This document shows, piece by piece, positions 23,495 to 64,000 of a stretch of 64,000 nt of DNA. Location of the stretch: the NCBI RefSeq assembly GCF_030144855.1, contig NW_026781537.1:62001-126000 (forward strand), read 5' to 3'. Made by a program: the position numbers and the translations under genes. The DNA is from Hypanus sabinus. Lineage: Eukaryota. The notes under the pieces were generated by a model that was given only the letters and a program-made list of their open reading frames with translations, had not been told where the DNA came from and did not search any database. Numbering within the stretch: the first letter of the stretch is position 1; every line of letters begins with the position of its first letter.

Positions 23495-23564
23495 ATGGGT
23501 TATCCAGTCCTTTTGCGGATAGGAGAAGTTTACTATCCTTTTATTTCAGCCTTTGGAATTCTCG
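23495..23564 (+). CDS. GPR139/GPR142-like orphan GPCR gene A, exon 1
   Basis: MGYPVLLRIGEVYYPFISAFGIL plus 1 nt; donor GTAAGC at 23565; phase matches the acceptor at 24926. Confidence 0.9.
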
Positions 23565-24926: not shown

Positions 24927-25831
24927 CGAACTTGGTGGCGATTGTGATCCTGTCCCGGGATAAGTGCGGTCTGTCCAAATGTGTAACTTGCTACCTGCTG
25001 GGAATGGCAGCGGCCGATCTCCTGGTCGTTATCTCGCATCTGCTCCTGATGCGGACTGCTTGGATATATTTTCCCAGATCATTCCTGTTCATCACTCCTG
25101 TGTGCAGTATCGCTAGATGGTTGATTTTTGCGAGCACTGCGGCCTCTGTCTGGCTGACTGTCGCTTTCACCGTCGATCGATTTGTGGCTATTTGCTGTGA
25201 GAAGCTGAAGACAAAATATTGCACCGAGAGAACGGCGGCTGTGGTTATCGGGACACTGAGTGTACTGGCCTGTTCAGAGAGTGTACCCTGGGGCTTTACT
25301 TCTGAATCTCTTGTAATAATTGATGGTGTTCCCTGGTATTGTGTTCTTACACCGAGCTACAAAAACTGCCCCTCATGGGCGGCGTTTGAGATGCTTCACC
25401 GTATTTTAACCCCTTGTGTCCCATTCTTTCTGATTTTGCTTTTCAATATTCTGACATCCAGGCGGATTCTAGTGGCCAGTCGAGCCCGCAGGAGGATCCG
25501 GGGACAAAAGAGTGGAGAGAATGACAAGGACCGGGAGATGGAGAACAGACAAAAGTCCATCGTTTTGCTCTTCAGAATAACGGGTAGTTTCATATTGTTG
25601 TGGGGAACACGTTTGGTATTTTACATCTATCAACGCATTTCAATGAGTTTTGTTTATTATTCTGTCATGAATCCCGTTTACATTATAGAAGAGACATCGG
25701 GAATGCTGGAGATTCTTAGTTCCTGCACTAACACGTGTATTTACGCCCTGACACAGAGCAAATTCCGAGAGGACCTCAAGAATGTGGTTAAATACCCACT
25801 GAATCGGATTTTGATACTCACTAAAACATAG
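24927..25831 (+). CDS. GPR139/GPR142-like orphan GPCR gene A, exon 2 (spliced product 324 aa)
   Basis: Polypyrimidine tract plus CAG; NLVAIVIL, MAAADLLV, SVWLTVAFTVDRFVAIC, TPCVPF, SSCTNTCIY; 7TM pattern, uninterrupted; AATAAA at 25833. Confidence 0.93.
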
Positions 25832-32328: not shown

Positions 32329-33005
32329 AGTGCTGTCTTTACGACAGTTATTTAGTTTATAAAATTTTCGCTTAGTAATTCATTCAATAGTATTTTCTAG
32401 TTAGAATTAGAAGTGTTTAAAGTATTTAAAATACTTAGAAGTGTTTAAAATATATCGGCATGCGATGACGTCACATCCGGTTTCGCCGCGTCTTGTGGGA
32501 AAATACCGGTTTGAAATTAGCGCGAGGGTGGGGGCTTACCACGAGGCTCACCTGAGCAGAAGTTGTTTTGCAGGCATGAGAAATCACAGTGAGAGCAACG
32601 CTGTAAGTTAATAGATAATCGATATATTGAACTAAGATGTTAATGCCGATCCTGTTAGAAGTAACGACGGTAGATAATGTTTATGCTTTCGTTAGTTAAA
32701 GAGTCGCGGATAGTTTGCATGGAAGTGTATTTAAAGTAGTCAATGGAGCAGGTAAACTCTCCCTGTATACTGCACCTTAGTGTAATGTAGTTATAGTCAC
32801 CTTTGCAAGTATTTACACTTGAAATGTGATATTAGGGAAGGAACAAATACTGTATCAATCTTGTATTGTTTTATCAACAGTTTTCACCATATGTTAATGT
32901 GAAGAGTGAACAGTAAATGGTTAATCTTACTGTGATCTGGTCTCATTAACTGGTTTATCTCGACGTTAAATTCGGCGTTCGTGACACGCGAAGGAGAACG
33001 TTACA
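32329..33005 (+). repeat. BEL 5' LTR
   Basis: Closely matches 39020-39677; first base is A rather than T. Confidence 0.93.
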
Positions 33006-33043
33006 GTGAAAAAGCGGCATTATCAGGTGTTTCAAGTGCTGCA

Positions 33044-39677: not shown

Positions 39678-42600
39678 ATGGGGCTGCACACGGATTTGGG
39701 ATGACACGCAGATTTGGGTGTCACGCCGATCTCTAAAAAGGATGTTTGTGCACATGTGGCTTTCTAACCTCAAGTCGGTCATTTGCAAAATTGTTTGAAA
39801 AGTTTGCTGGTCTGGAATAATCCATTATGTATCTGGGGTGTCACCGACTTCGGGATTGCGCAGATTTATGTCTGCTTCGGCATATATGGGTGGCAACTGA
39901 TTTGCGATGCGAACAGCTTCAGTGAAAACCGTCAATATTCTGATTTCGAGATGTTCTGGTCTTTACTGATTTCCGTATTCTCAGAGATCTGAGGTGGCTG
40001 CGGAATTGGAGTGTGGCGTATCTGAAGTTTGTTTCATCTACAGTTACTTTCGACGATATTCATGCTGGAGGCAGTTATCCCGTGAACTGTTTGAAATGAT
40101 TCTTGCTCTGACATGGTCTGTTGCATCTAAAGGGGTATCAGCGCGTTTGGAAGTGCGCTTTGCTTTGTGAGTGTGCACTTGTAATGTGCGCAGACTTGTG
40201 AAACACATGTATCTGGGGGTGCACACGGTTTAATGCATGAACAGAGATTCGAGTGATGATGCGGATTTGGGGTCGAACACGAATTTGGTTGTTCATACCG
40301 ATCTGGCTTGTCGCTGGATGTTTAATGATACTTTGTTAAGAAATGCACTTGCAAGTTAATACTTTATTCTTATTGATTGGTTAAGGACGATTTTGTGAAC
40401 TGGTTGAAATTATTCCTGCTCATGGATATTCTTATGTGCATGTGGCATTGCCAGTGAGTTGCTGGCGCACACTGATTTCGGGTGTGGGTGGGACAAATCT
40501 CATTTATAGAAACCGGATAATAAATGCAATTTGAACCTTGGCCTTTGTTCCAGGTATTATTAACATATGAGCCAGCTACTTTGTGAAACTGTTGGAAATG
40601 TTACTTCCTCCAGAATAATGCAATGTGCATGTAAGTGTTTCAGTGTATTTGGGGGTGCATACAGATTTAGTGGAGTGCACAGCTTTAGGAGAGTTTCGGC
40701 GAGTACGTATGCACAGTGATTATATGGGTGGATTTGGCAGGTGAATGCTGCCATTTTAAAGTGACTCTTCCATTGGGAAAATCAACAGGTTCAGCAGGTT
40801 TGGTGGTGTACACGATCTTAGGGTGTTCCCGCATTTGGGGGTGTCTCTGGATTTGAGATACTGACAAATCTCAGGGTTGTTTCATTGATAGGTACTTTAT
40901 TAATAAATATTCTTTCAGTTCTCTACTTTGCTAGTACTGTGATTTTTAAGTTGGAGGTTGGTACTTTGTGAACTATTTGAAATTGTTTCTCCTCTCGGAT
41001 AATATTATCTGTAAACAGGAGATGTTGACGGGTTCGGAGTGCGCACCCATTCGGGTGTGCATACGGATTTGTGAGTGCGCGTGGATTTTGGAATGTCAAG
41101 GGAATTGGATAAATGCGAAAATTCGTTTAGTTTACAAATACTCGGATACAAATGCACTTTAACGTCGAGCTTTTTACTTGTTATTTTTAATGTGGATTAA
41201 CCTATCTTGTGAAGTGTTTGAAAAGTTTCTTGCTCTGGGATAAACAGTCGTACAAATGTACATGTAGGGGCTCACTCGGATTTGAGGGTTCTCAGAGATC
41301 TTGACATGTGCGCGGCGAGTTTGGGTACTCACGGATCTGAGAGTGTCGGTGGATTGGGGTGTGCGAAGAATCACGAGGTTGTTTCATTTATAGATACATT
41401 AAAAATCGAACTTGGAACTTTGGTAAGGATTTAAGGATAGGTATGTCAAATGCATTTGCACATATTTCATGGTTTGTTTGAATATTTTGGTGCACTTGGA
41501 TCGGGGATGCGCACAGATTTGTGCGCCTCGGCAGGTTTAGGGATGCACACGGATTTCGGGGTGTCGGTCTATCCTATGAGGTTACATAGCAATTATGGAA
41601 GCGTATTCTGCTGTCCCGCTTTCCGCAATTCCCTACCATTTATTATATAAGTCTACCCAGGTAGGTCCGGCCAAAGTGCAACAGCTCACACTAGATACCA
41701 TCTGGTTGGAATGTCACATTATATTCCAACTGCAAAATGTTCAGCCCGTTTTTCCAGCTGCATCACTGACGCTGAAAGTTTTCATAAACTACTCTGCTGT
41801 CCACTCACGCTCTGAACCCAGGTGTCATCTGAAAATCCACTTTATCATATTACTTTATCACTTATATATCCCGTTCCTTAGAATGTGTTTCAATACGTTT
41901 TGGACTGCACACAGATTCGGGTGTGTCGCTGGATTTGAGGTGCATACTAATTTGATTTGCAGATATAGAGGGAGAGGGTGTACGCATATTTTGTCATTGC
42001 GAGGAATGGTTTTGGGATAATCTAGTTTTCAAGTCGGTGTGTACACGGGTTTCAAGTTGTAAATAGACATAAGGGTACACACGGAATTGGAGGAGCGTAC
42101 GGATCTCGGTGCTCTCACTGATTTGGCGTGTCTACGGATTCGAAGGTGTGGCGAATCTCAAAGTTGTTCCATTTATAGATACTGTAACAAACAATGTCAT
42201 TTGAACGTCGACACCTGTTCTTGAATTTCATTTTTTCTTCTTCTTCAGGCAGCCATTATGGCAAAATTTGAAATGATTCTTCNNNNNNNNNNNNNNNNNN
42301 NNNNNNNNNNNNNNNNNNNNNNNNNNNNNNNNNNNNNNNNNNNNNNNNNNNNNNNNNNNNNNNNNNNNNNNNNNNNNNNNNNNNNNNNNNNNNNNNNNNN
42401 NNNNNNNNNNNNNNNNNNNNNNNNNNNNNNNNNNNNNNNNNNNNNNNNNNNNNNNNNNNNNNNNNNNNNNNNNNNNNNNNNNNNNNNNNNNNNNNNNNNN
42501 NNNNNNNNNNNNNNNNNNNNNNNNNNNNNNNNNNNNNNNNNNNNNNNNNNNNNNNTCTTATTTGAGGATGGGCATATATTTTGAGGTGCACACGGATTTG

Positions 42601-46690: not shown

Positions 46691-47828
46691 CTTAACCAAG
46701 CTTATATTTAGAGTTTATACTTCGATCTTACAAGCTCAGGATTACAATTTGAAAAAAATCATCGCGGACCATCCACTGAAGGACTCAGTCTGAAACCTCA
46801 ATTCAGCTTTCTCTGGAGAATGTAAAATCTGAATACAAACTGCCGGTACTCCCAACATCTTACTAATTGCATAAATAATTTATCCCCGATCGTGATTGTT
46901 TAGAGAGACCCTCCAATTTCCCAGTTGCGCCAATTCAAAATTAGCTCAACCTTTGTTCCATTATTTATCAAGTTTATATCACACTGTCTTTTTCAACCAT
47001 TCGTTGCTTGTTCTTTGTCCAACGTCAGTTCTGCGTTGGCATAGTCGAATATCTCGTTGACACTGACTAAGATTAGACCAGTCAGAAGCAAGAGACAATC
47101 TGCAGACCCTAGAATTCCAATATGCTGGAGGATTCCAATTCCAATTCCAATTCTGCTGCCTGAGCTGAAAACCTTCGCCAGCACTCTCTGTAGGATTAGT
47201 TCATATCAGTTCGCATTTCGCTTCGCTGTGTCTTTTGTTCTTGGGTTCACAGCATCGCCTCGTCCACCTACCACCGCTCCTCCACCTTCCCTTTGAAAGC
47301 TAACATTCTGTTACGGGAAATTAGTTCAAATCGGAAAACAGAAGGAAAAGCTACAGGTAGGGACAGAGGAGAAAATCACCGTGAAGTAAAGGACGGGTAA
47401 TGATGGGAGCAGGAGTGGGTAATACCGACGGAAGTATACTCCATATCAAGCTGTTTTGTCAGAATCAGGAAGAAGGCTTGACAGGTTCGCCTCAAGGCAC
47501 AACTTAAGCGGGATGAGGGTGAGATACAAAGGGGATTTTTCTGGAATGCTGAATCCAGTCGTGTCGTCGCGATTGACTGTACATATTTGTTGTATAACTG
47601 TAAGGCAACACACACAAACTGCTGGAGCAATTCAGCAGATGGATGGCAACTTTGGAGAAGAGTAAACATTCAACTATTCGGCCGACAACCTTCATGATTT
47701 TGTGTATTGCCTTACAGTTATACGTTGTTTGAAACACTGTTCATCATATTGTTTCTGTTTATTAAAAGAGGGAGGACAGAATAGGAGCGTGAAGACAGCT
47801 GAATTGTACTACTGCATAGCATTTATTT

Positions 47829-48733
47829 CTATATTTTAATGAGTTTCAAAATCAGATTCAGTGGGTATTTCACCACATTCTTGAGATCCTCTCGGAATTT
47901 GCTCTGAGTCAGGGCGTAAATACACGTGTTGGTGCAGGAACTGAGGATCTTCAGCATTCCCGATGTCTCTTCTATAATGTAAACGGGATTCGTGACAGAA
48001 TAATAAACAAAACTCGTTGAAATCCGCTGATAGATGAAAAAGACCAAACGTGTTCCCCACAACATTATGAAACTACCGGTTATGCAGAAAAGCAAAACGA
48101 TGGATTTGCGTCGGTTCTCTATCTCCCGGTCCTTGTCATTCTCTCCACTTTTTTGTCCCCGGAGCCTCCTGCGGGCTCGACTGGCCACCAGAATCCGCCT
48201 AACAGTCAGAATATTGAAAAACAAAATCAGAAAGAATGGGACACAAGGGGTAAAAATGTGGTGAAACATCTCAAATACCACCCATGAGGGAGAGTTTCTG
48301 TAGCTCGGTGTAAGAACAAAATACCAGGGGATACCATCAATTTTTATCATAGGCTCGTATACAAAGCCCCAGGGGACACTCTCCAAACAGGCCAGCACAC
48401 TCACTGTCCCGATAACCACAGCCGCCGTTCTCTTGGTGCAATATTTTGTTTTCAGCTTCTCACAGCAAATAGCCACAAATCGATCGACGGTGAAAGAGAC
48501 AGTCAGCCAGACAGAGGCAGTAGTGCTCGCATGAATCAGCCATCTAGCGATACTGCACACAGGAGTGATGAACAGGAATGATCGGCGAAAATAAAGCCAA
48601 GCAGTCCACGTCAGGAGCGGAAGCGAGATAACGACCAGGAGATCGGCCGCTGCCATTCCCACCAGGTATAGAGTTACACATTTGGAGAGACCGCACTTAT
48701 CCCGGGACAGGATCACAATCGCCATCAAGTTCA
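47829..48733 (-). CDS. GPR139/GPR142-like orphan GPCR gene B, exon 2 (spliced product 324 aa)
   Basis: Acceptor CAG at 48734-48736; 905 nt, same length as gene A exon 2; TVDRFVAIC, SSCTNTCIY; uninterrupted. Confidence 0.93.
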
Positions 48734-50141
48734 CTGAAGAGAGAGCGGAAATAGCAATTTGAGAAAATACTGAGTAAAACCCATTGCCGCAGTTTTCGGG
48801 GATCATGCAATATTCCCGGTTTATTGTTGCATTCAGCGGTAGGAGGGTGCAAAGAGGGTCAAGAGCTGGCTGAGTTTACACATTAAAATAATGTCACGTA
48901 ATTAAATTTGGATTCCTTTCTGTTGACCAAAAAATATGAAGAGGCAGCGGACAGATGCAACTAGGTACCCTCAGAGTTAGTACGGTTTGAAACATTTTTA
49001 TCGGTTTCATCCGCGTCTGATATGAATGAAATGAATCAATTCGGACGCCGATGGCGGGATTCTTGCATTAAACAATCATCAACTTCCCTGTGACTCCCTG
49101 TCAGCGACAGAACAGCCGAAGGACACAACAGAAACAGCAATTCCCGGAACCTCTCATCCAGACAAAAATAGAATATGTGGGAAAGGAGTTAACGTGTATT
49201 TTCTGAACTGTTTTCAGAGAGGCCCCATGACACGACTTTCTCTTACTCTTTCTATACAAGCTGCCTGAGGCTTTATGTTTCCAGCATTTCCGGTGTTTGT
49301 TTCCTATTCCAGCATTTGCCAGCTCGCCGACTTTCTAGCAGAACTTTGACTGAGGCAGCAGTCACAGCCTAGTCTGATACAGCCTCTCAGATATACTTGA
49401 CGCCCCCGACTGAATCCACCACAGGGAAGCGGGGAGCATAATTCAACACCCAGTAGCAGGCACGGTGACACAGACAGATGATTGTAGCGGTGTCAGATGT
49501 GGATATATTATAATACATTTTGCAGTATTTATATTTATTTGGATAATATAATACATTTCGCAGTGTTGGTAGTTATGAATCTACACGTCGGATTTGTTAA
49601 TTGAACAGCAACGACGTCATTGTATTGTCCAGCAACTGCTTCACTTTCTGTCACACAGCTCGCTTTTAGTGAAAATCCTCAATATTCCTGCTGCAACAGG
49701 GAGCTTCTCAAATTTGCTGAATCCTTACCTCTAATCGATTGTTTGATCACGACACGTACCTCACACAACCGCTCACATAACAATGCAGACAATCAATTAG
49801 CATCATCTCCGCGGCAGTATAAACACAGTATTTGCAAATGCAGTGTGGCTGCTTCGAGACCAATAGCATAGAGACCCGAGCATCACATTATTGAACACAA
49901 ACCGCTGGAAGATATCTGCCTGTCCAACTGAGGTCTTCCGATGTTGGCGCATTCGCTAAATTCATACAGCGGTTTATTTTTAGATCCAGATATCAGAATC
50001 CACAGTCGCTGGCTTTGCTTCCATTCCTAGAATGTCGAATACTAGCACTGGATATGAGGTTGTGGAAACCAGTGACAGAAGCAATCACTATATAGACATT
50101 AACTTCAATTCCCACCAACGGCAGCCGATACCGCAGCTTAC

Positions 50142-50211
50142 CGAGAATTCCAAAGGCTGACATAAAAGGATAGTAAACTTCTCCTATCCGCAAAAGGGCT
50201 GGATAACCCAT
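50142..50211 (-). CDS. GPCR gene B, proximal exon 1
   Basis: MGYPALLRIGEVYYPFMSAFGIL plus 1 nt, donor GTAAGC. Confidence 0.88.
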
Positions 50212-51614
50212 TTCCGTGATAAACTGCCAATTGTGTTGCTCCTGAATTCACAGCTCCTTCAGAAACTCTGAGCTAATGTATTCTAAGCGGCCCGGATTTA
50301 CAGAAATGATCAGTCTCCAGAGACACTGTTATGCCGCTGACTGACAACAGTCACTTGAAAAATCATGGTAATTCAGCACCATTCACTGTCTCTGATGTAC
50401 ATATTGAGCCGACAGAAGACAGCCACTTCTAACTTCCTCGGCATTACCTCCGCGCTTCCTCACCTAGTGAGAAGAATGCCGGAGCTCCATTGATAAACAC
50501 CCGAAGCAGCCACATTTACAGATTTCATCCTTTTTCTCCGCTAATTAACCACTTGTGAACAGAGTTCAACGACACGTCCGAACTCAAACTTCTCTCCCTG
50601 TGGTTTGCCATTTTCAACATCATCCTGGACGCACGCACACACACGCGGAATGGCCGTGTTCGGATGACTGCGATGCTGATGCACTAAAGATGACAAAATT
50701 TGCAGATGCTGGTAATCCTCAGGGGAAGGCAACACACACAAAGTGCTGGGAAAAAAAATCTTGAGATGTTGCTGATGTAATTGGATCTTAAGAGCATCTC
50801 AGACCAGCCAGAACGGAAAGGAAGAACTGCTTCGATCTGCAAAGGGAATATTCAATAATAAACATTAAACAAAGGACTCTAAATTGGGAGATGAATCGAC
50901 GTAGGATGGATGAAAGTGAATGAAAAGAAGACCAGTACAATATGCTATATTATAACGGTGTGAAAAAGACAGAGGGTCAGACCGACAGATTGACAGTGGC
51001 ACACGCTGCAACGGCCGCTTCACACAACCGTCGGGCATATACCTCTCCCTCACTGACCGAGTTTCCTTCTCCTACCAACAGGGAAAACTTCAATCAACTC
51101 CGATTTTCCCTCCTGTGGAGTCAACAGAGCAGTCGCTCCTCTCTGACACGCAAGGTGTTTTACAAAGCACAGGCACCGACTGCTCATTAGTTCCCACAGT
51201 TTTAGACAGTGGAGAAATTCAGGTACAATCCCACACTGAACTCAAGACACAGATTACCAATACAACGGCTACACTGAAACACAGGTGGATAATATTTCCA
51301 TTGACCTCGGCACCACTGTCCTACAGTAGAGACACAGACCCAGTCTCCAAATCCACACCCACAGGATTAGCAGTGTCAGTGTGAGCTCAGTATTGGACGT
51401 ACCGCTGATAAATTGGAAAATTATGAATGTGGTATTGGAAGAACTTAAGAAAGTTTCGGATAAGCGCGCGAGGAGGACATTTTGTCTGTGATGTTGGGCT
51501 GACGAAAGTAAGCCAGTGATGCCTCATTAAACTAATCCCTCTGCCTGAATGCACGTCACGTATTATTTCCAGGTCTGCGCAGAGTTCCTCAAGAAAGTTA
51601 TCCCTGCAACGGAG

Positions 51615-52454
51615 TTTGACGAATGAGGAGCAACTCCGATGGGAAGAAGGGTACAGAATCGCCAATGCCCCCCCCCCATCCTTTTGGAGAATCGCAAATC
51701 GCTACTATTCCGATGCTGTTATCAAAGGGAATGAGAGATATAAACAGCTCATAACAAATTTATGAGAGAGGGGCACAGCACAGGTTGGAATGTATCCTAT
51801 TGACAAAGAGAGAGATTACTGCTATAGTCCCTTGGAGAAAGATTCGTGTATTGAGTACTGTTCGATTCATTGAAACCCCGCAGGGGGCAACCAGAGTGGT
51901 CTGGTTGAGGGATTGCATCATCCCTACCTGGTTGACTTCTGAGACCCCGTGAGTGGGGGAGAAAAGTAAGGGTCTGGAGAACACCCCTCAGACGCACCAG
52001 AAGAGACGCTACGAGACCGGTGGGGGCTGGTGTGTGTGTCCACCCTTGCCTGGGTGACGAATCCTCCACGGAACGGTCTAGCTAAAGGACGGAGACGGAT
52101 CAAGACCGTAAAAGTAAAGTCGGCACGTTACTCTCACTCTCTCTCTCTCTCTCTGTCTCCAACAATTGCAACACAGTGAACAAAAACTACTGCAGCCAGT
52201 ATGAACTGAACTGAACCTTATATTTCCATCAGACTATTCATTATCCCCGAGACAACGATAGAGCTTATTTCTTATTGATTATTATTAAACCTGCACTTTT
52301 AGGTTTAGAATTGATGACGTATATTATCTGTATATTTGCATTGATATTACTTTTGTGTATTTTTACTAATAAATACTGTTAAAATAGTATCATCAGACTT
52401 CAACGGATACTCCTATCTTTGCCAGTAAGACACCCAGTTACGGGGTTGGTAAGA
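51615..52454 (+). mobile_element. Degenerate solo LTR
   Basis: Insertion relative to paralogous sites at about 20730 and 57600; decayed termini 'tttgacg' and 'ggtaaga'; GGAG/AGAG flanks; AATAAA at about 52368. Confidence 0.7.
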
Positions 52455-53759
52455 AGAGAGAGTGAAGGGACTATTCCTCACTCTGAACTGACGGCTGCAA
52501 GCGATGACAAGCTGTCTGTGTGAGGGGCGAGTGCATGAGCTGGGCTTGTATTCTCTGGAATTGTGAGGAGAATTAATGGATTCTGTCAGGTAATTCGACC
52601 GACTGCTGGGAGGATGTTTCCCTTGAATGAAAATTCTATTACCATGGGTCATAAACTCAGAATGAAGGAAATGATAATCAGAATGGGGTGGAAAATAAAT
52701 TGCCCTCATCAGTGATTATTTCTCCAGTTAGTCAGTTCGGTACAGGAAGAGACAATTTAGTCTGTGATGTTGGGCCGATATGATTAAGCCCGTAATGCCC
52801 AATTAAACTAATCACCCTGTCTGCAAGTACTCTATATCTGACCCTTCTCTGTGGATTTGCTATCCTATCTCAGACTCTTATAATTACCACTGCCTTCACA
52901 ACAACGCTAGAACTGCATTCTAGACACCCGCAACTCACTGCTTTGGTTTGTTTTAATCATTTCCGCACACATCTCCTTTGAACATTTTTCTCTCTCACCT
53001 CAACTACATGTCCTCTGTTATCGGATACTTAAATTCTTTGAGAAAGGTTACAGTTGCATACTGTATTTATGCCTTTCCATCGCCCCTTGGTGGCTGCCAT
53101 TCTGGAAAGAATAACTCAATTTCTTTCAAATCCTCCTTTTAGATCCCCTCCGGATGAAACTTTGCTAAAAATTTCCAAAGCCTCGGCTTCTTTCTGATAA
53201 CGGGGCGACGGAAGCCAATGTTAAACTCCAGACGGAATCTAACCAGAGATGGATAAAGCGGCAACATCACTTTCTTTATGACAAGAATGATCCTCCCAGT
53301 TATTGCCTAGGCTTCTGCCATCCGGAAAGAACTGTTTAAGTTTGTGCAATTTCAGCAACTTGAGACCTTGTAGACCTTCTCTTAAAGGTCCTCCCGATAA
53401 CCTCCTCTATCCCATTTCCAAATCCTTGTCATCTTCCCTATAATGGAGCGACTGAAACTAAATTCAATATTGCACAGGCAACATGACCAGAGCTCTATAG
53501 AAAACCAAAGTTCTCTGGACGAGGACGAACCGACGGGTGTGAGCTGGTTCTGCGATGTCCCGAGAAGCAATAGGTGGGAGAGTGCTGGAGGACGTTTGCT
53601 CTGCACACGGACAGGTGGATACAGTGATCATCCGAATTGAACGGCCACAGCACCTCCTCCCTCAAGCGCAAAGAGCTTGCTCGACAGGAAGCTGAGCATG
53701 AAATTGACATTCCGGATAAACAGGACTAGCCAGAAATGAACGAACGAGAACGAAGGGGT

Positions 53760-54870
53760 CAATGAGGAAAAGACCAGATTAATTATTTGCTTAAGGGTTT
53801 CAATTATCGTAAATATTAGTGAACGTTACGATCATGGGACGGTAGTTCGACTAAATGGCGGGTAAATATGTTTTTATCCAAACAGGCGATGATCTGACGG
53901 GAGTGGTTCTGTCTGTTCCCATTGGAGTATCTGGAGAGGCGGGGCCATGGGCCGTCCATACTTTCAGAGAAGTGTGGAGTTAACGAGAGAGTGCTGAATT
54001 GGAAGTAGAGTTTCCCGTAACTGACGCCAAAGACTTTAAAGACAAGTTGCTCACGTTTCTGCGGAGTGAGGCGAAGAAGCTGTCTGATGTGAACGGTCTG
54101 ATGATTCATTCAGAAGTTGACTTAAATTCTGAACTCGGTTTGGCTTTACATCTCTGGCTGATAAATGCACAGGTATTTCTTCGGAGAGTCGAAGTTATTG
54201 TCGCGTTGGAATGTTCGGTGGCATCAAGTCCACATCCGATGGGGATGAAGAATATGAGGCTTGGGCTGAGCAGACTTCTCAGTTACTGGGTGAATAATAT
54301 GAGGAAACTGCGACTGGCAGAGAGCTTATATAGCTGATATAGCGAGTTTCCTAAAGGCGAAAATTCTGTTGCCACATCAGCGAGTTAATTGCAAACTCTG
54401 GAAGATGCTATTGCCACTGCTGAAAGCGCAGCCGATCTGAGGATGAAGGTCAGGTACATATTATAGTAATAAGGAGCTATTTGCTTGCCTACATTTTCAG
54501 ATTGGCGAAGCTGCTGCACTGTTTGATCTACAAAGGGTGCATTCAACTGTATAAGAGATATTGAGGAAAAGAAAATTGTGAAGAGCGGGTTGTCACATAA
54601 CGTGAATGCTCTACGTATTCGAATGACCCGAAAGATGCGGCCTCTTCCGACTTTACTCAGAGATGTTATAGAGCAGGAAAACAAGATGGAGAAGTGGGAG
54701 GCCTCCATCACCAGAGCAAAGTTCTCTGTAGAAACCTATGTTACTGAAGCGCCCTTAACGTCACACAAATGTGGGTTTTGCAGGTCGTCGAGAAACATCT
54801 GACGACCGACGTAATTGGGATGATCTCGGTTGGAGCTGCCACCAAGCACCAAAGGCCGAATGGTACGTAC
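53760..54870 (+). mobile_element. PNMA-type Gypsy gag remnant (copy 2)
   Basis: ORFs 53999-54337 and 54578-54802 (LPTLLRDVIEQE); DEEYEAWAEQTSQLL in another frame. Confidence 0.7.
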
Positions 54871-55646
54871 GCGTGGGTATCTGGTACATGTCACGTGACC
54901 ATTACGTGATTGAGGCTATACTAGAGATGAGGTAATGGTCTTGTGATGGTGGAGTGACGTCATCTCCCCGCCAGTCAGAGGTCATGTGATAGTTTTGTTC
55001 AACAGGGTACAAAAGGAGAACTTTTTACAGTATGTATAATTATATGGATAACATAATACATTTCACAGTGTTGGTAGTTTTGAATCAACACGTCGGTTTT
55101 GTTAATTGATCAGCAACGATGTCATTGTGTTGACTAGCAACTGCTTCACTTTCTGTCACACAGCTCACTTTTACTGAATATTCTCAGTCTTTCTGCTGCA
55201 ACAGGGAGCTCCTCAAATTTGCTGAATCATTACAATCCACTGTTTGATCAAGACACTTACCTCAGACAACCGCTCACATACCAAAGCAGACAATCAATTA
55301 GCATCATCCCCGCGGCAGTATAAACACAGTATTTGCAAATGCAGTGTAGCTGCTTCGAGACCAATATCACAGAGACCTGAGCATCACGTTATTGAACACA
55401 AACCGCTGGAAGATATCTGCCTGTCCCACTGATGTCTTCTGATTTTGGTGGATTCGCTGAATGCTTACAACGGTTTATTTTTAGATCCAGATACCAGAAT
55501 CCACAGTCGCTGTTTTGATTCCATTCCTAGAATGCCGAACACTAGGACTTGACATGCGGCTATGGAAACCAGCGACAGAAACAATCATTACATTGGCATT
55601 AACTTCAATTCCCCCTTCCCCGACGGCAGCCGATAACACAGCTTAC

Positions 55647-55716
55647 CGAGAATTCCAAAGCCTGAAATAAAAGGATAGTAAACTTCTCCTATCCGCAAAA
55701 GGACCGGATAACCCAT
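55647..55716 (-). CDS. Third intact GPCR exon 1 with no exon 2 of its own; candidate distal first exon of gene B
   Basis: MGYPVLLRIGEVYYPFISGFGIL plus 1 nt, donor GTAAGC, TATAAA at about 55802-55807 on minus. Confidence 0.65.
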
Positions 55717-58700
55717 TTCCGTGATAAACTGCCAATTGCTTTGCTTCTGAATTCACAGCTCCTTCAGAAACACTGAGTTAATGTATTCAAAACGGCCTTG
55801 ATTTATAGAAATGATCAGTCTCCAGAGATATGGTTATGCCGATGACTGACTGCAGTCACTTGAACAATCATCGTAATTAAACACCATTCATTGTCTCTGA
55901 TGTAAATATTGGGCCGATAGAAGACTACTACTAAATTCCTAGGCATGACCTCAGCGGTTGCTCACCTAGTGGAAAGAATGTCGGAGGTCCATTGACAAAC
56001 ACCCGAAGCAGCCGCATTACAGATACTTTTTTTTTGTCCGCCAAATATCAATTTGTAAAAAGAGTTCAACCACACTTCCGACGCCTAGCATTTCTCCCTG
56101 TAGTTTTCCATATTCAACACTATGCTTACCACACACACGCACACACACATGCACGAGTTGACAGTGTTCAGATGACCACGACGCTGATGTACAAATCATG
56201 AGTTAATTTGCAGATGCTATAAATTCAAGGCAACACACACAAAGTGCTGGTGCAGAGCAGCCGCTCCTCTCCGACATACAAGATGTGTTACAGAGCAGAG
56301 ACACAGACAGCTCACTAGTTCCACAGTTTCAGAGAGCAGAGAAATTCAGATACAGTCACACACTGAACCGAAGGCCCAGACGCAGATTACCAATACCACA
56401 GATGGTCAGGATTTCCTTTGAATTCTGCACAACTGTCCTACAGGTAGAGACACAGACCCAATCCGAAATCCCTACTCACGGGGCTGACAGTGTCACTGTG
56501 ACTTCAGGATTGGACACACAGATGGAAAATTGGGAACTGATGAATGTGGTATTGGCAGAACTTAAGACAACTTCGGATAAGCATATGGGCTTCTGGGTAA
56601 TATGCGTGTGTGTGAATTAGTCAGCAGTACAATGTGAGATGCAGGAAATAAATGGACCACACTCAAACCTTTCGGTAACTCAGGGATTGTGGTAGAGACC
56701 CCAGCTGTTCACAGTCTACAGTGGAGATTTGGATATGAGGACGAACTATATTATATCCACGTCGGCTGTTGGAAAGAGCTGAATAGCAGGGCTAGTAGTG
56801 GGAAGGGAGCAGCGAGGGCTTGGGGATGCAAACAGAAGGAGTGAAGGTGTAGCAGACGGACAGAATATAGGGTTATTCGGGGACATTCTCTCCCAGAGGG
56901 ACAAACTAGAAAATCAATATTTACATGGGGCCGGAGTGTCCGGTTCGGAGGGCCCTGACGTTCCTGGTCAACAAATCACTAAGAGTTAACATTCAGGTAC
57001 AGTAAATAATTAGGGAGCCAAACAGATTTTTGTGTTGTGATGCAGGAGAATTGGAGAACAGTTATACGGATGTCTTACTGGGAGGTGCTCTGCGGGGTGC
57101 GGTGAGAATGCACCATGAATATTAGATCCAGGTTTTGTCACCCTTCCTTGTGAAACTTATCCCTGTTGAAGAGACGGGGCCGAAACTATCCCTCACACTG
57201 ACAGTATAGATCCGGGGATGGCACACTTGTTGAGTGGGGGAGAGTGTGTCTGCATTCCTTGGAACTGTGAGGAGAATTGCTGAGATTTTTCAGATCGGTC
57301 AGACCAATTGCAGGGAGGATGTTTCCCCTGAACGATGATTACATTACCATTTGTCACAGTCCCAGAATGAAGGAACGGATATTCAGGAAGGAGTGGAAAA
57401 CAAATGTTCTTAATCAATGATTCTCTTTTCAGTTAAAACATACAACAGTGCAGGACAGGAGGAAGCCATTTGGTCTGTGGTGTTGGGCTGACGTAAGTAA
57501 GCCAGTGGTGCTTCATTAAATTAATCCCTCTGCCTGAATGCACATTGAGTATTATTTCCATGTCTAGTCACAGTTCCCCAAGAAAGTTATCCCTGAAACA
57601 GAGAGAGCGACGGGACTATTCATTACACTGAGTTGACAGCTTCAGGAGATGACAGGCTGAGCCTGTGTTGTCTGAAATCGTGAGGATCATTGAAGGATTC
57701 CTTCAGTTATTTCCGACCGATTGCTGGGAGGATGGTTCGCTTGAATGAAAATTCTTTTCCAATGGGTTTCAGACGCAGAATGAAGGGAATAATATTTACA
57801 ATGGAGTGGAAAATAAATTTCCCTCATCAATGATTATTTCTCCAGTTAGACATTGCGGTACAGGAAGAGACCCTTAGTCTGTGGTGGTGGGCTGATATGA
57901 TTAAGTCGGTGATGCATAATTAATTAAATCTCCCTGCCCGCGGTTTGTCTATACAAACACCCAGACACCCGTAAACCTCTGTTTTGTTTTATTTTAAACA
58001 TTTCTCCCATAAATCTCCTTCGAACATTTTCCTCTCTCATCTCAACTGCATGTCCTCTCTTGATACTGTGAGAAAGGTTACATTTGCTTACTGTATTTAT
58101 GACTGTTATAAGCCTCTCTATCTCCCCTTGGTGGCCCCCACTCTGGAAGGAATAACACAAGTTCGTGAAAATCCTCCTTTTAGATCTCTTCCCTATAAAC
58201 CTCTTCGAAACTCTTTCCGAAGCCTTGGTCTCTATTTTATAACGGGGCAACCGAAGCAAATTTTAAACTCCAGACGGAACCTAACCAGAGATTGATAAAG
58301 CGTCAACATCACTTCCTTTCATGACAATAAGGATCTTCTCAGTTATTGCCTTGGCTTCTGCCATTCCGGAAAGAGCAATTCAATTTCGTGCAATTTCTGC
58401 ATCTTGAGGCCTTGTAAATATCCTCCCAAAGTCCTCTTTATATCCTCCTGTATTCCCTTTCCAAATCCTCATCATCCACCTTATAATGGAGCGACTGAAG
58501 CTGAATGCAATATTCCACGTGCCACCTGACCAGAGTTCTATAGAAAACGGGAGTTCTCTGGACAAGGACGAAACGTCGGGAGTGTGCTTGTTCTGCAATG
58601 TCCCGACAAGCAGTAGGCGGGGGAGTGCTGTAGGATGTTTGCTCTGCATGCGGACAGGTGTATATAGTGATCAGCCGAAGAGAACCGCCAGAGCACCTCC

Positions 58701-58799
58701 TCATTCAAGCAAAATGAAGCTGCCCGACAGGAAGCAGAGCATGGTATTCACATTCCGAGTAAACTAGTCACAAATGGACAAGCGAGAACGAAGGGGTCA

Positions 58800-60940
58800 A
58801 TGAGGAAAATACCAGATTAATTAATTGCTTAAGGGATTTAATTATCGTAAATATGAGTGAAAGTTACGATCATGGGACGATAATTTGACTAAATGGCGGG
58901 TAAATATGTTTTTGTCCAAACTGGCGATTACCTGAGGGAGTGGATCTACCTGTTCCCATTGGAGTATCTGGAGAGACGGGGCCATGGGTCGGCCATACTT
59001 TCAGAGCAGAGCGGAGTCAAGGAGAGAGTGCTGAATTGCAAGTCGAGTTTCCCGTAACTGACGCCAAAGACTTTAAAGACAAGCTGATCTCGTTTCTGCG
59101 GAGTGAGGCGAAGAAGCTGTCTGATATGAACGGTCTAATGATTCATTCAGCAGTTGATTTAAATTGTGAACTCGGTTTGGCTTTACATCTCTGGCTGATA
59201 ACTGCAGAGAGATTTCTTCGGAAAGCCAGTTTTGTAGGCTTGGAAAGTTCGGTGGCATCAAGCCCATATCCGATGAGGGTGAAGAATATGAGGCTTCGGC
59301 AGAGCAGACCTCTCAGTTACTGGATGCATAATACGAGGGCACTGACACTGGTAGAGAGATTAAACGGTCCGTCTGCTGATATAGCGAGTTTACTAAAGGC
59401 AGAACATTTATTGCCTCTTCAGCGAGTTACCTGCAAGCTCTGGTAGATGTTATTGACATTGCTGAAAGCGCAGCCGATAGGAGGATGAATTTTAGCCACT
59501 AAATTGCTTGCCTACATTTTCAGATTGGTGAAGCTGCTGCTCTGTTTGATCTACAAAAGGATGCATTCAACTATTTGAGAGATATTGAGGAAGAGCAAAT
59601 TGTGAAGAGCGGGTTGTCACATGACGGGATTGCTCTACTTATTCGAATGTCCCAAAAGATGAGTCCTCCTCCATCATTATAATGAATTACTAAGAGAAGT
59701 TAGAGAGCAGGAAAACAAGATGGAGGAGTAGGAGGCCTGCATCATCTGGGCAAAGTTCCTGGTTGTGGGCTCTGTTGTTAAAGCGCCCTTAACATCACAC
59801 AAATACGGGTTATGCAGGTCGTCGTGAAATATCTGACGACCGACGTAATTATGAAGATATCGTTTGCAGCCGCCACCAAACACCAAGGGCCAATAGGACG
59901 CCCGACCCACTGGTGCGATGTACCGAGGCGAGGGCTGCTACTGAGCAGCGTCCTTAGAACAGCGCAGTGACCAGTGTTTTCTGTTGCAATTGAGGGGAGT
60001 ATAAACATTTTAACTGGTAGAGCGAAAGACATGAAAGTCTTCGGAAAGTTAATCAGCGGTTAATCAAATAACAAAGCAAATAGGTAAAACTACAGAGGGA
60101 CACAGTGAAGGAACGGGATGACGTTTTCTAGTGGATACGTAACTATCAGTGTATCAAGGCTCAGACTAAAGTTAAAAAAAAATATTCCCGAAGGGTTAGT
60201 GAGACCAAGCTCTGATGTATCTAGGCGAAGTGAAGGAGTATATGTTAGAGCCATAACTGACCACTGGTTCTGAAGTTACTTTGCTTTGTAGATCCATTTA
60301 CATCCGATGTTTGACGCACTTGCCATTGGCGCCAGTGTGTGCCCTTGATATTCCGCGGCTTAGTACTGATGGTTACCCCTCCGATGGTAACTTTTCGTCA
60401 ATGCTGGAGTTTATGGAAACATATGTTGGAGTAACTGAGACTATTGACACAACACTGTTGTTGAGCCCGGATTGGATTGAAAAGGATGGAATTTTTATTC
60501 TTGTGAGAAGGCGCCAAAGAGAATGAGAAGCGAGAAATACAGAGAACTTTTTGAACACCTTGTCCATTCACCCCGTGTTCAGAGCCGCTTTTGAGAAGGT
60601 GCAAGTTCCTGTTAAATAGGATGATGAGCGCAAAAGAGGAACTGTGAGTTCTGTCATGGATACGTTCTGGGAACAGCTGGAGCAACAGGAAACCCTACAT
60701 TTGCTGAAATTTTCGAAAAGTGGAAACAAGGATTGACTGATAACATGTTGGAACGCGAAGACGCCTTTTCCAATGGAAAATCGGAATTTGAATTCGCCAC
60801 ACTGTTGGAGCAATCGAGGGAACCCTTTTCCGAGAGAGGTTTTGCCGACTGGTTCCAGCAGGGGATCAAGATATTTATCAGCTACTGAAGTCACCGAAGG
60901 AAGCTAAGTTTAGTCATGGAGCAGGAGCGCCTAAGCCGCC
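58800..60940 (+). mobile_element. PNMA-type Gypsy gag-protease remnant (copy 3)
   Basis: ORF 58940-59446 (ERLNGPSADI); protease-like 'actggttctgaagttactttgct' (TGSEVTLL) near 60263. Confidence 0.7.
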
Positions 60941-61225
60941 GGGAGACACGACTGATGGACACGGGGAGAGTCGGTCCAGTAGTCAACTGGGAGACACGAG
61001 TGATAGACACGGGGAGACACGGTCCAGTATTTTACCGGGACACATAAGTGATAGACACGTGGAGACACCATCCACTAGTCAGCCGGGAGAAACGAGTGTC
61101 AGACACGGGGAGACTCGGTCCAGTAGTTTACCGGGACACATAAGTGATAGACACGGAGAGACACCATCCAGTAGTCAGCCAGGAGATATGGGTGATAGAC
61201 ATGGAAGACACGGTCCAGTAGTCTG
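60940..61225. repeat. Degenerate minisatellite, unit about 42 bp
   Basis: Unit approximately GTGATAGACACGGGGAGACACGGTCCAGTAGTCAGCCGGGAGACACGA; shorter mirror array at 16360-16490. Confidence 0.85.
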
Positions 61226-61254
61226 TAAGGGTCACAAGCGCTGATTTAATGCGC

Positions 61255-61830
61255 AAACCATTCATTTTCCTGAATCCCCGAGAGTAGAGACCTAGAACCG
61301 TCACATTCTTCTCGCATGACAAAGCTTTCAACCCTGGAGTGATTTTCATAAACCACCTTTGAACCGTCTCCAGTAACAGCACACCCTGTCTAGGACTAGG
61401 TGCTCCAAACTGCTCACAGTACTCAATGGGCATTTCATCCGAAATCTACATCGCTGCATCCATACTCCATTCCTCTCGAAATGATCACGAACATCGCATT
61501 GGCCTTCCTCACCACTTTGGCAAACTGCATATTAACATTTTGGGAATACTGTACGAGGAACTAGAGTCCATTTACACCTTAGATTTTCCAATTTCCTCTG
61601 CGTTGAGAAAAGAGCCTTCTATTTTATTTCTTCTACTTAAGGGCAGGACCATATGTTTCCTGACAGTATGGACTATCTGCACCTTCTTTGCCCATTCTCT
61701 TAATCTGTCCCCGTCCTTTTGTAGCCTTTCTGCTTCCTACAGATATCCTGCACCTCCACCTATGTTCATCCTGACCGCAAACCTGTCCGTATGATCATCA
61801 ATTCCAACATCCAATTCATTAACATATAAA
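61255..61830 (-). mobile_element. CR1-family fragment (mirror of 15890-16325)
   Basis: Reverse-complement match. Confidence 0.7.
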
Positions 61831-62074
61831 ATAAAAATATTCATCCATCCATCAGGTCAACTGTATCCTGCATTTCTGTCTGATATTGTGCTACCTCAAT
61901 TGCAAAACTCTTTACATATCATCTAGTACGCCTATATTGTCTAAGGTTTGTTCTTATAACTTTCGAAATCATGTTTACTATCTGCATTAAATGTTTGAGC
62001 TTTACTTGAATAATTTAAAATCGTGCATGTTCGATCCTCTGTCAAGGTGTAATTCGTCTGAGAGAAGAGTAAGA

Positions 62075-63912
62075 AATTACTTAAGAAATAAATCAGGAGG
62101 GATAAAAGAAGACATGAGGTTGCTTTCCAGTCAGGGTGAAGGATAATCCTAAGGTATGTTAAGAGCAAAAGGATATTTAGAGATAAAATTGGTCCATTTG
62201 AAGATCAGAGTGGTCGGCTATAAAATAAATGGGAGAGATATTAAATGTTTTTTTTTGCATCTGTATTTACTAAAGAAGCTGGAATGGAGTTTATGGAACC
62301 AAGGCAAACAAGTAGGGAGTTCATGGAATTCATACAGATTAAAGAGGAGGAGGTGCTTGCTGTCTTGAGGTAAATCAGAGTAGATAAATCCCCAGGACTT
62401 GACAGGGCATTCCCTTGGACGTTGAAGGAGACTAGTTTCCTGGCAGGGGCCCTGGCAGAAATATTTAGCATGTCGATATCCACGGGTCAGCTTCCGGAGG
62501 ATTGGAGGATAGCTCATCTAGTTCCGTAGTTTAAAAAAAAAGGCTCAAAAAGGAAGCCGGGAAATTATAGGCCGGTAGTAGGTAAATTATTGGAAGGAAT
62601 TTTAAGAGATAGGATCTACAAATATTTGGATAGACAGGGACTTATTAGAAAAAGTCAGCATGGCTTTGTGCGTGGTTCGTCATGTTTAACCAATCTATTA
62701 GGGTTTTCCGGGGAGGTTACAAGGAAAGTGGATGAAGGGATGGCAGTGGATATTGTATACATGGACTTCAGTAAGGCATTGACAAGGTCACGCACAGGAG
62801 GTTAGTTAGGAAAATTCAGTCACTAGGTATACATGGAGAGGTACTGAAATGGATTTGACATTGGCTGAATGGAAGAAGCCAGAGAGTGGTAGTGGAGGAT
62901 TGCTACTCTGAGTGGAGGCCTGTGACTATGGTGTGCCACAGTGATCAGTGCTGGGTCCATTGTTGTTTGTCAGCTATATCAATGATCAGGATGGTAATGT
63001 GGCAAATTGGATCAGCAAATTTGCAGATGATATAAAGATTGGACGTGTTGTGGACAGTTAGGGAGGTTTTCAAAGCTTGCAGAAGGATTTGGACCAGTTG
63101 AAGGAATGGGCTGAAAAATGACAGATGTAGATTAATGCGGACATGTGTGAGGTATTCCACTTCGGAAGGTCAAACCAAGGCAGAACATACAAGGTAAATG
63201 GTAGGACACTGAGGATTGCAGTAGAACAGAAGGATCTGACAGTACAGCTACATAATTCCCTGAAAGTGTCTTTCAGCTAGGTAGGGTTGTAAAGAAAGCT
63301 TTTGGTACATTGTCCTTTATAAATCAATGTATTGAGTATAAGAGTTGGAATGTAATGGTGAGGTTCTACAAGACATTGGTGAGACCGAATCTGTAGTATT
63401 GGATGCAGTTTTGGTCACCTAATTACAGGAAGAATATTAATAAGGTTGAAAGAGTGCGGAGAGGTTTACAAGGATGTTGCCGGGTCTTGAAAAACTGAGT
63501 TACAGAGAAAGGTTTATTCCCTGGAGCATAGGAGAATGAGGCGTGATTTGATAGAGGTGTATACAATTATCATGGGTATAGATAGAGTGAATGCAAGCAG
63601 GCTTTTTTTCCACTGAGGCTAGGGGAGAGAAAAATAAAACAGAGGTCATGGTTTAAGGGTGAAGGGGGAAAAGTTTAAAGGGGGGCTTCTTCATCTGGAA
63701 AGTGGCGGGAGTGTGGAATGAGCTGCCAGATGAAGTGGTGAATGCGGGCTCACTTTTGACATTTAAGAAAAACGTGGACAGGTATATGGATGAGAGGGGA
63801 TTTGAGTGATATGACCCATGTGCATGTCTGTGGGACTAGGCAGAAAAATGATTCGGCACAGCCAAGAAGGGCCAAAAGGCCTTTTTCAGTGCAGTAATGT
63901 TCTATGGTTTTA
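62075..63912 (+). mobile_element. CR1 LINE 3' 1.8 kb, decayed
   Basis: SQHGFVRGSSCLTNL, VDIVYMDFSKA, SKFADD; tail 'ttctatggtttta'; same 3' flank as the 14630 copy. Confidence 0.92.
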
Positions 63913-64000
63913 TCTGGTTGTCTCTGAGAGAGGTTATATCTAAACAAACTCCAGTGGGCTTCGTAGTCGCCCTGGATTATTACGTAAAATAACAATTAAT

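What the first reader, a model, noticed from the sequence alone, without database searches (positions are those of the whole stretch)
47829..55900. Duplicated promoter/exon-1 cassettes that could both feed one GPCR exon 2
Seen: on the minus strand, two intact 70-nt first exons (55716-55647 and 50211-50142) lie upstream of a single exon 2 (48733). Both have an ATG, an open frame, a GTAAGC donor and the same phase. The distal copy keeps TATAAA; the proximal copy has TGTAAA at the equivalent position. The N-termini differ at three residues (V/A, I/M, G/A). Inference: tandem duplication created a variable-first-exon arrangement, and the distal promoter may drive gene B through an intron of about 6.9 kb.
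Basis: partly seen in the sequence, partly recalled or inferred. Interest (0 to 1): 0.72.

Follow-up and report, generated by a model that had tools for sequence, protein, structure and literature searches.

The report
Spare first exon from partial gene duplication
A 5.5-kb piece holding the promoter and tiny first exon of a ray orphan-receptor gene was copied in tandem without the rest of the gene, leaving a second, still intact-looking first exon upstream that has drifted at about the neutral rate, so it looks like an ordinary by-product of duplication and not a designed variable-exon system.

Summary
On the minus strand, two 70-nt first exons (55716-55647 and 50211-50142) lie upstream of one exon 2 (48733-47829). 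Each has an ATG, an open frame, a GTAAGC donor and phase 1. Either one gives a 324-aa class A GPCR of the large shark-and-ray "probable GPR139" family. The 23 residues it encodes are that family's standard N-terminus.

The cause is a clean partial tandem duplication. Unit 49515-55019 is repeated as 55020 to about 60000, with the junction at 55020|55019 inside intron 1, so exon 2 was never part of the distal copy. This lies in one arm of a larger inverted duplication; the other arm carries gene A on the plus strand. The copies differ by 12-18%, so a collapsed or expanded assembly is unlikely.

Whether the distal exon is used could not be tested:
- no RNA run holds this locus;
- the runs laid were DNA of relatives;
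- the tool for fetching related loci was closed.

The distal first exon shows 6-7 lineage-specific changes where neutrality predicts about 9. The constraint seen on the other two copies predicts about 2. An unconstrained copy would still look intact 33-56% of the time.

It is most likely an unselected spare exon, possibly giving a minor isoform. The scan reached a similar duplication-and-decay verdict for another cluster of this genome. Interest is low.

The parts
47829..48733 (-). Gene B exon 2: 905 nt including the stop at 47831-47829. It encodes residues 24-324 with the 7TM core.
   Evidence: Acceptor and open frame. Pfam 7tm_1, E 6e-22. 60-85% identity to elasmobranch 'probable GPR139' proteins. 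dN/dS 0.42 against gene A.
48734..50141 (-). Gene B intron 1 as spliced from the proximal first exon (1,408 nt). Its upstream 627 nt (49515-50141) are part of the duplicated unit.
   Evidence: 85.4% identity to gene A's 1,362-nt intron.
50142..50211 (-). Proximal first exon, coding part (70 nt, phase 1, MGYPALLRIGEVYYPFMSAFGIL), with a GTAAGC donor.
   Evidence: 2 lineage-specific changes in the whole first exon against about 6.4 expected.
50297..50302 (-). TGTAAA where the other two copies have TATAAA. It is part of a cluster of 5 proximal-specific changes (50301, 50294, 50293, 50287, 50284).
   Evidence: The cluster is not significant as a scan statistic, P=0.17.
49515..55019 (-). Tandem unit 1: the 5' part of intron 1, the proximal first exon and promoter, and about 4.3 kb of upstream sequence. 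It includes a unit-specific high-copy repeat insertion at 51612-52455.
   Evidence: Self-blastn. Repeat depth and empty-site joints in DNA runs.
55020..55646 (-). Truncated copy of the 5' part of intron 1 (627 nt), downstream of the distal exon. It ends at the duplication junction 55020|55019.
   Evidence: Alignments A2 and A3. Left of the junction matches the proximal intron at 49515. Right of it matches the start of the upstream unit and the gene A side at 18513.
55647..55716 (-). Distal first exon, coding part (70 nt, phase 1, MGYPVLLRIGEVYYPFISGFGIL), with a GTAAGC donor.
   Evidence: 6-7 lineage-specific changes in the first exon plus donor against 9.0-9.6 expected under neutrality.
55802..55807 (-). 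TATAAA of the distal copy, 91 nt upstream of the ATG. It and the next 13 nt are identical to gene A.
55020..59917 (-). Tandem unit 2: the distal cassette 55020-56250 plus its copy of the upstream sequence. The far end is approximate.
   Evidence: 55020-56250 matches 49515-50749 at 84.7%. 57963-59900 matches 52922-54867 at 81.7%.
23495..23564 (+). Gene A first exon, the third copy of the cassette (MGYPVLLRIGEVYYPFISAFGIL).
   Evidence: 1-2 lineage-specific changes against about 12.5 expected, P<=3e-4.
24927..25831 (+). Gene A exon 2 (acceptor ..tcttccag|CG), with an intact frame.
46770..64000 (.). B-side arm of a large inverted segmental duplication. Its partner arm is 14543-26974. It runs to the end of the window.

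Best explanation
Gene B is a two-exon class A GPCR of the elasmobranch-specific 'probable GPR139' expansion. Its 70-nt first coding exon encodes the family's standard 23-residue N-terminus and start of TM1. Its 905-nt second exon encodes the rest. After, or about when, an inverted segmental duplication produced genes A and B, a segment of about 5.5 kb was duplicated in tandem on the B side. The segment ran from 627 nt inside intron 1, through the first exon and promoter, to about 4.7 kb upstream. The join is non-homologous, with 1-3 nt of microhomology. Exon 2 lay outside the segment, so the distal cassette was an orphan first exon from the start and is not the remnant of a decayed full gene. 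These steps are shown. The rest is inferred. The distal cassette keeps everything needed to fire and to splice to the only downstream acceptor, across a 6,913-nt intron. Its transcribed part has nevertheless changed at close to the local neutral rate. It is therefore most likely an unselected spare first exon. It is either silent or gives a minor, functionally near-equivalent isoform that differs at 3 of 324 residues. The proximal exon remains the main route into exon 2.
For: Structure:
- Self-alignments define the two units and the inverted arms.
- The junction is resolved to 55020|55019, with the intron homolog on one side and the start of the upstream unit on the other.
- There is no exon-2-like sequence, no ORF of 120 aa or more and no Rfam match between the cassettes.
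- The distal and proximal copies share a roughly 40-nt intron segment that gene A lacks.

Gene model:
- 49 of 120 retrieved relatives start with a standard 23-residue N-terminus of consensus MGYPVIxQIxxIYYPVLAAxGVP followed by VNLVAI, and 324 aa is the most common length among them.
- In gene A, the frame upstream of the acceptor carries stop codons.
- Exon 2 of A against B gives dS 0.185 and dN/dS 0.42, with both frames intact.

Constraint, over the first exon plus donor (132-142 nt):
- Distal: 6-7 changes, against 9.0-9.6 expected at the flank rate.
- Proximal: 2 changes, against 6.1-6.7 expected.
- Gene A: 1-2 changes, against 12-13 expected (P<=3e-4).
- If the distal copy were constrained like the other two (ratio 0.16-0.21), 1.5-2.0 changes are expected. 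P(at least the observed number) is 0.004-0.016, and the likelihood ratio for neutral over constrained is 7-33.
- The distal A19G change hits a position that is Ala in 42 of 49 relatives.
- Simulation shows that an unconstrained copy keeps its ATG, open frame and GT with probability 0.33-0.56, so intactness says little.
Against: - No transcript data of any kind could be obtained, so silence or minor use is inferred and not observed.
- The constraint signal comes mostly from gene A. Distal (6) and proximal (2) counts do not differ significantly once the flank rates are allowed for.
- The distal copy keeps TATAAA and 13 following bases identical to gene A. The proximal copy has TGTAAA and four more changes there. 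This is the opposite of what a dead distal copy and a live proximal copy would predict, although the cluster is not significant.
- Low divergence of first exons could partly reflect short gene-conversion tracts and not selection.
Confidence: 0.58

Rival explanations
1. This is a working pair of alternative promoters and first exons. Both cassettes fire, perhaps in different cells or stages. Each splices to exon 2, giving two receptor isoforms that differ at residues 5, 17 and 19 and, more importantly, in regulation.
For: - Both copies keep the ATG, open frame, phase 1 and an identical donor (CTCG|GTAAGCTG).
- The distal copy keeps TATAAA and about 4 kb of homologous upstream sequence.
- No competing exon 2 or long ORF lies between the cassettes.
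- Only one AATAAA stands on the transcribed strand in the 5.4-kb interval.
- The distal exon count of 6-7 against about 9 expected is also compatible with weak constraint.
Against: - The distal first exon changes at close to the flank rate, and significantly faster than under the constraint seen on gene A and the proximal copy.
- Intactness is expected by chance in 33-56% of cases.
- There is no transcript evidence.
- The protein difference is 3 conservative residues in the N-terminus and TM1.
Confidence: 0.27
2. This is a promoter hand-over. The distal cassette has become the main promoter, and the proximal one, now lying inside the intron, is decaying.
For: - The proximal copy lost the TATA box (TGTAAA) and has 5 lineage-specific changes within 19 nt there. 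That is the densest proximal-specific cluster in the cassette.
- The distal copy is identical to gene A in that stretch.
- The proximal I17M change puts a residue at position 17 that is seen in none of 49 relatives.
Against: - The cluster is not significant after scanning all windows, P=0.17.
- The proximal first exon has the fewer changes: 2 against about 6.4 expected, compared with 6-7 against about 9 for the distal.
Confidence: 0.1
3. This is an assembly artefact: two paralogous loci wrongly joined at 55020, or a falsely expanded repeat.
For: - A chimeric join between paralogs would look like a partial tandem duplication.
- The laid stretch (47500-53499) did not reach the junction, so it was not checked with independent reads.
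- The family is highly multi-copy.
Against: - The copies differ by 12-18%, far more than haplotypes or read error would give.
- The junction joins non-homologous sequence with no N run, whereas assembler switches happen inside shared repeats.
- The distal and proximal copies share an intron segment absent from gene A.
- Unit 2 continues in order into sequence that is collinear with the gene A arm.
Confidence: 0.04
4. No first exon is needed. Gene B is a single-exon gene that starts at the ATG at 48806, giving the 325-aa ORF 48806-47829.
For: The frame upstream of the acceptor is open in gene B back to an ATG.
Against: - The same stretch in gene A has stop codons.
- The last residues of that extension are just the translated polypyrimidine tract of the acceptor.
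- Relatives in sharks and skates carry the exon-1 peptide.
Confidence: 0.01

Closest known systems
Variable-first-exon clusters (clustered protocadherins, UGT1A); recalled from established knowledge, not tested here
   Same: Repeated cassettes of a promoter plus first exon, made by tandem duplication, lie upstream of shared downstream exon(s). All have a donor in the same phase, so any one could splice to the common acceptor.
   Different: In those clusters there are many variable exons. Each encodes a whole functional domain, is kept by selection and is shown to be spliced to the constant exons with regulated promoter choice. Here there are two copies of an exon encoding 23 residues (3 differences), no transcript evidence, and the distal copy drifts at about the neutral rate.
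Partial (incomplete) tandem gene duplication leaving orphan exons, as in the duplication-and-decay reading given to another GPR139-like cluster of this genome (earlier finding s1-146629)
   Same: This is segmental duplication in a fast-expanding receptor family, with a breakpoint inside a gene, so that a gene fragment sits beside an intact gene.
   Different: Here the fragment is the 5' end and sits upstream in the same orientation as an intact gene, so it remains structurally able to feed that gene. Nothing in it is visibly broken.
Human GPR139 (solved structures 7vug and 9m42)
   Same: It is the best solved-structure match, aligned over almost all of exon 2 (residues 1-281). It is a class A receptor. 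From memory, GPR139 and GPR142 also have a short first coding exon ending in TM1.
   Different: The similarity is weak (E 1.5e-9, 41 bits) and barely above AT2R, NMUR2 and GPR15. The ray and shark proteins form their own very large expansion, so the name is a best-hit label and does not show orthology.

Membership tests
Class A (rhodopsin-type) GPCR | A match to the 7tm_1 profile over the full seven-helix core | tested here: met
   PF00001: E 6.2e-22 over profile positions 2-260 of 260 for gene B, and E 4.4e-19 for gene A.
Elasmobranch 'probable GPR139' expansion | High identity to annotated members and the family's usual length | tested here: met
   The best 120 hits are all shark, ray or skate proteins at 54-85% identity, and 324 aa is the most common length among them. 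Gene B spliced is 324 aa.
Elasmobranch 'probable GPR139' expansion | The standard 23-residue N-terminus, consensus MGYPVIxQIxxIYYPVLAAxGVP (exact strings vary between members), followed by VNL(V/M)AI | tested here: met
   All three exon-1 copies encode MGYP(V/A)LLRIGEVYYPF(I/M)S(A/G)FGIL and join to (V/A)NL(M/V)AI. 49 of 120 relatives have the standard start.
True GPR139 orthologue | Clear, specific similarity to GPR139 above other class A receptors | tested here: inconclusive
   Human GPR139 is the top solved-structure hit, but at 41 bits against 40 bits for AT2R and 37 bits for NMUR2. No phylogeny was made.
Variable-first-exon gene (protocadherin or UGT1A type) | Two or more promoter-plus-first-exon cassettes upstream of shared exon(s), with compatible phase | tested here: met
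   Two cassettes, both phase 1, identical donors and one acceptor.
Variable-first-exon gene (protocadherin or UGT1A type) | Each first exon is seen spliced to the common exon in transcripts | not testable with these tools
   No RNA run holds the locus. The runs laid were DNA contigs of relatives that also cover the intron and upstream sequence, and no 50142-to-48733 joint was listed.
Variable-first-exon gene (protocadherin or UGT1A type) | Each variable exon is maintained by selection | tested here: inconclusive
   The distal first exon has 6-7 changes against about 9 expected neutrally and about 2 expected under the constraint of the other copies (P 0.004-0.016). The distal and proximal copies are not separable.

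The most novel reading that the evidence does not exclude
The distal cassette is in real use. Either it is a second, differently regulated promoter, or it has taken over from a proximal promoter that lost its TATA box. Partial tandem duplication would then be a way for members of this very large, unstudied elasmobranch receptor family to gain new expression patterns without changing the receptor.
Probability: 0.25. Interest if true: 0.4.

Novelty: new member of a known kind. Interest (0 to 1): 0.2.

Why it matters
In itself it matters little. Partial tandem duplications that leave spare exons are routine in expanding receptor families, and the two possible proteins differ at three N-terminal residues. 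It has three modest uses. It gives a cleanly resolved example, with exact breakpoints, of how an alternative-first-exon layout arises. It fixes the correct two-exon gene model, with a short first exon about 1.4 kb upstream, for a family whose annotated ray models mostly have non-standard N-termini. And it points to a first exon and 5' UTR that are far better conserved between paralogs than the receptor body. If the distal promoter proved to be active, the locus would be a simple natural case of regulatory gain by promoter duplication.

Tried and rejected
1. RNA evidence. The one run search found no run on record as RNA that holds the locus. The four runs laid (X1-X4) gave short DNA-type contigs, mostly 90-95% alike, covering the intron and upstream sequence as well. 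They showed no splice joint and did not reach the distal exon or the junction, because at most 6,000 letters could be laid.
The other locus collections hold no ray genomes.
3. Single-exon model from the ATG at 48806. Rejected, because gene A has stops in that stretch.
4. Decayed full gene copy. Rejected, because there is no exon-2 remnant and the junction lies inside the intron.
5. Cluster of changes at the proximal TATA box as a sign of promoter death. Not significant as a scan statistic, P=0.17.
6. Order of the two duplications. The three-way branch lengths are star-like (cassette 6.5, 4.3 and 8.1%; upstream unit 8.0, 6.5 and 6.1%) and the shared indels conflict, so the order is unresolved.
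7. Literature. No paper in the library links GPR139 with sharks, rays or skates in a relevant way. A search on alternative first exons and tandem duplication gave nothing specific.
8. Rfam and small ORFs between the cassettes: nothing found.
9. Joined model. The joined exon 1 plus exon 2 was only translated and compared with the window inside a local script, to check the frame.
10. The N runs at 22813-23091 and 42283-42555 were left untouched.
Full report
**What is there**

An ATG-initiated 70-nt open exon ending in CTCG|GTAAGC lies at 55716-55647, and another at 50211-50142. A strong acceptor (..ccgctctctcttcag|TG) opens exon 2 at 48733, which runs to the stop at 47831-47829. A local frame check shows that either first exon joined to exon 2 gives 975 nt, or 324 codons. 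The two N-termini differ at V5A, I17M and G19A, plus one silent CCG/CCA change. TATAAA lies 91 nt upstream of the distal ATG (55807-55802). The proximal copy has TGTAAA there (50302-50297). A third copy of the cassette belongs to gene A on the plus strand: exon 1 at 23495-23564, a 1,362-nt intron, and exon 2 at 24927-25831. Gene A also has TATAAA, so the proximal G is derived. tblastn at E<=10 finds exon-2-like sequence only at the two known exon 2s. Between the two cassettes there is no ORF of 120 aa or more and no Rfam family.

**What the gene is**

Exon 2 matches Pfam 7tm_1 over the whole profile. Searched by reference, it finds about 2,000 proteins. The best 120 are all from sharks, rays and skates, and nearly all are labelled "probable G-protein coupled receptor 139". 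The closest are from Mobula and Hemitrygon at 78-85% identity.

Among the hits, 324 aa is the most common length. Of the 120, 49 begin with a standard 23-residue N-terminus of consensus MGYPVIxQIxxIYYPVLAAxGVP, followed by VNLVAI. The 70-nt exon therefore encodes the family's standard N-terminus and start of TM1, and the two-exon model is right. The longer single-exon ORF from the ATG at 48806 is an accident of an open intron frame: the same stretch of gene A carries stop codons.

Human GPR139 is the best solved-structure match but only weakly (E 1.5e-9, 41 bits, just ahead of AT2R and NMUR2). "GPR139" is therefore a best-hit label for a lineage-specific expansion and does not show orthology. 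Genes A and B both keep intact frames. Exon 2 gives dS 0.185, close to the intron distance of 0.162, and dN/dS 0.42, so both have been under purifying selection.

**How the arrangement arose**

Self-alignment shows two nested events.
- Inverted segmental duplication. The arms are 14543-26974 and 46770-64000, the latter running to the window's end. They carry genes A and B tail to tail.
- Tandem duplication within the B arm. Unit 1 is 49515-55019 and unit 2 is 55020 to about 59917. The cassette 55020-56250 matches 49515-50749 at 84.7%. The upstream block 57963-59900 matches 52922-54867 at 81.7%.

The A arm has only one such unit. Alignments across the join place it at 55020|55019 (on the minus strand..AAAAAGT|TCTCCTTTT..). 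The left side is homologous to the proximal intron at 49515. The right side is homologous to the start of the upstream unit, at 18513 on the A side. At most 1-3 nt of microhomology are shared.

The duplicated segment therefore ran from 627 nt inside intron 1 to about 4.7 kb upstream of the exon and never contained exon 2. The distal cassette was an orphan from the start and is not the relic of a decayed full gene copy.

The distal and proximal copies share a roughly 40-nt intron segment that gene A lacks. However, three-way branch lengths are star-like and other indels conflict. The cassette gives 6.5, 4.3 and 8.1% for the distal, proximal and A lineages. The upstream unit gives 8.0, 6.5 and 6.1%. 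The two events were therefore close in time and their order is open.

A divergence of 12-18% between copies, a junction between non-homologous sequences without an N run, and collinearity of unit 2 with the A arm make an assembly artefact unlikely. The junction itself was not checked with independent reads.

**Is the distal exon used?**

This could not be observed.
- The single run search returned no run on record as RNA that holds the locus.
- The four runs laid on 47500-53499 gave short contigs, mostly 90-95% alike, that also cover the intron and upstream sequence. They are DNA of relatives or paralogs, and no exon 1 to exon 2 joint was listed.
- They do show that both exons are high-copy sequences in those genomes.

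**Sequence evolution**

The three copies allow each change to be assigned to one lineage. I took the first exon plus donor as running from 25-35 nt after the TATA box to donor position +6 (132-142 nt) and compared it with the rest of the 1,056 aligned columns.

| Lineage | Changes observed | Expected at flank rate | P |
|---|---|---|---|
| Gene A | 1-2 | 12-13 | <=3e-4 |
| Proximal | 2 | 6.1-6.7 | about 0.04-0.06 |
| Distal | 6-7 | 9.0-9.6 | 0.17-0.26 |

If the distal exon were as constrained as the other two together (ratio 0.16-0.21), 1.5-2.0 changes would be expected. P(at least the observed number) is 0.004-0.016, and the likelihood ratio for neutral over constrained is 7-33.

Three of the distal changes fall in the 5' UTR, which is otherwise almost invariant. 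One replaces Ala19, which is Ala in 42 of 49 relatives. A simulation shows that an unconstrained copy at this divergence keeps its ATG, open frame and GT donor in 33-56% of trials. Intactness is therefore weak evidence for function.

**Caveats**
- The signal is carried mainly by gene A, and the distal and proximal counts are not significantly different from each other.
- The core promoter points the other way. The distal copy is identical to gene A over the TATA box and the next 13 nt. The proximal copy has five changes in 19 nt, including the TATA box itself. That is the densest proximal-specific cluster in the cassette, but a scan-statistic shuffle gives P=0.17.
- Short gene-conversion tracts could mimic constraint.

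**Verdict**

The observation and the tandem-duplication inference are confirmed and refined. The proposal that the distal promoter feeds gene B remains structurally possible: same donor, same phase, only one acceptor downstream, a 6,913-nt intron, and one AATAAA on the way.

My estimates:
- about 0.58 that the distal cassette is an unselected spare exon, silent or a minor isoform;
- about 0.27 that it is a genuine second promoter;
- about 0.10 that it has taken over from the proximal one;
- a few percent for an artefact.

This is an ordinary product of segmental duplication in a fast-expanding receptor family. An earlier follow-up on another cluster of the same genome reached the same kind of conclusion.

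The joined exon 1 plus exon 2 model was used only inside a local script for the frame check and a comparison with the window. The N runs were not touched.

Noticed in passing
window 14543-26974 and 46770-64000: A large inverted segmental duplication, about 76-90% identical in blocks, carries genes A (+) and B (-) tail to tail. About 20 kb of unrelated spacer lies between the arms. The B arm runs off the end of the window, so its full size is unknown.
   Followed up: partly
window 32981-38962 (+): A BEL/Pao-type LTR retrotransposon lies in the spacer. It has a 605-aa gag-like ORF (weak DUF1759 match) and a 1,005-aa pol ORF (Peptidase_A17, RVT_1, rve, DUF5641). It was described only.
   Followed up: partly
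window 51612-52455: A repeat of about 840 bp is present only in tandem unit 1. Its depth in the DNA runs is 100-1000 times that of its neighbours. Contigs of runs X2 and X3 join 51611 to 52456 and 51610 to 52597, which looks like the empty site in relatives or paralogs, so the insertion came after the duplication. 47500-47699 is another high-copy repeat.
   Followed up: partly
window 23435-23570, 50136-50270 and relatives P0001-P0021: The first exon (5' UTR plus 70 coding nt) differs at only 3-4 of about 137 positions between gene A and the proximal copy. Exon 2 differs by 9.6% and the intron by 14.6%. The annotated Mobula and Hemitrygon models read lack the standard N-terminus, and none of P0001-P0021 except the aberrant P0004 passed the N-terminus filter. 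The short first exon may therefore often be missed in ray annotations.
   Followed up: partly
family level: About 2,000 proteins match, and the best 120 are all from elasmobranchs and mostly labelled 'probable GPR139'. No paper in the searchable library discusses this expansion. Its ligands and tissue of expression appear to be unstudied.
   Followed up: partly
window 50284-50302 (-): Five proximal-lineage changes fall within 19 nt around the former TATA box (TATAAA to TGTAAA). The distal copy and gene A stay identical to each other there. This is suggestive of promoter change, but P=0.17 after scanning all windows.
   Followed up: yes
window 7189-8565 (+) and 10599-11264 (-): There are fragments of reverse-transcriptase ORFs. 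One is LTR-type with an aspartyl protease, and one is a LINE-like RVT_1.
   Followed up: no
window 22813-23091 and 42283-42555: Two N runs. The first starts about 400 nt upstream of gene A's ATG and cuts the three-way promoter comparison short at 23094. Both were left as they are.
   Followed up: no
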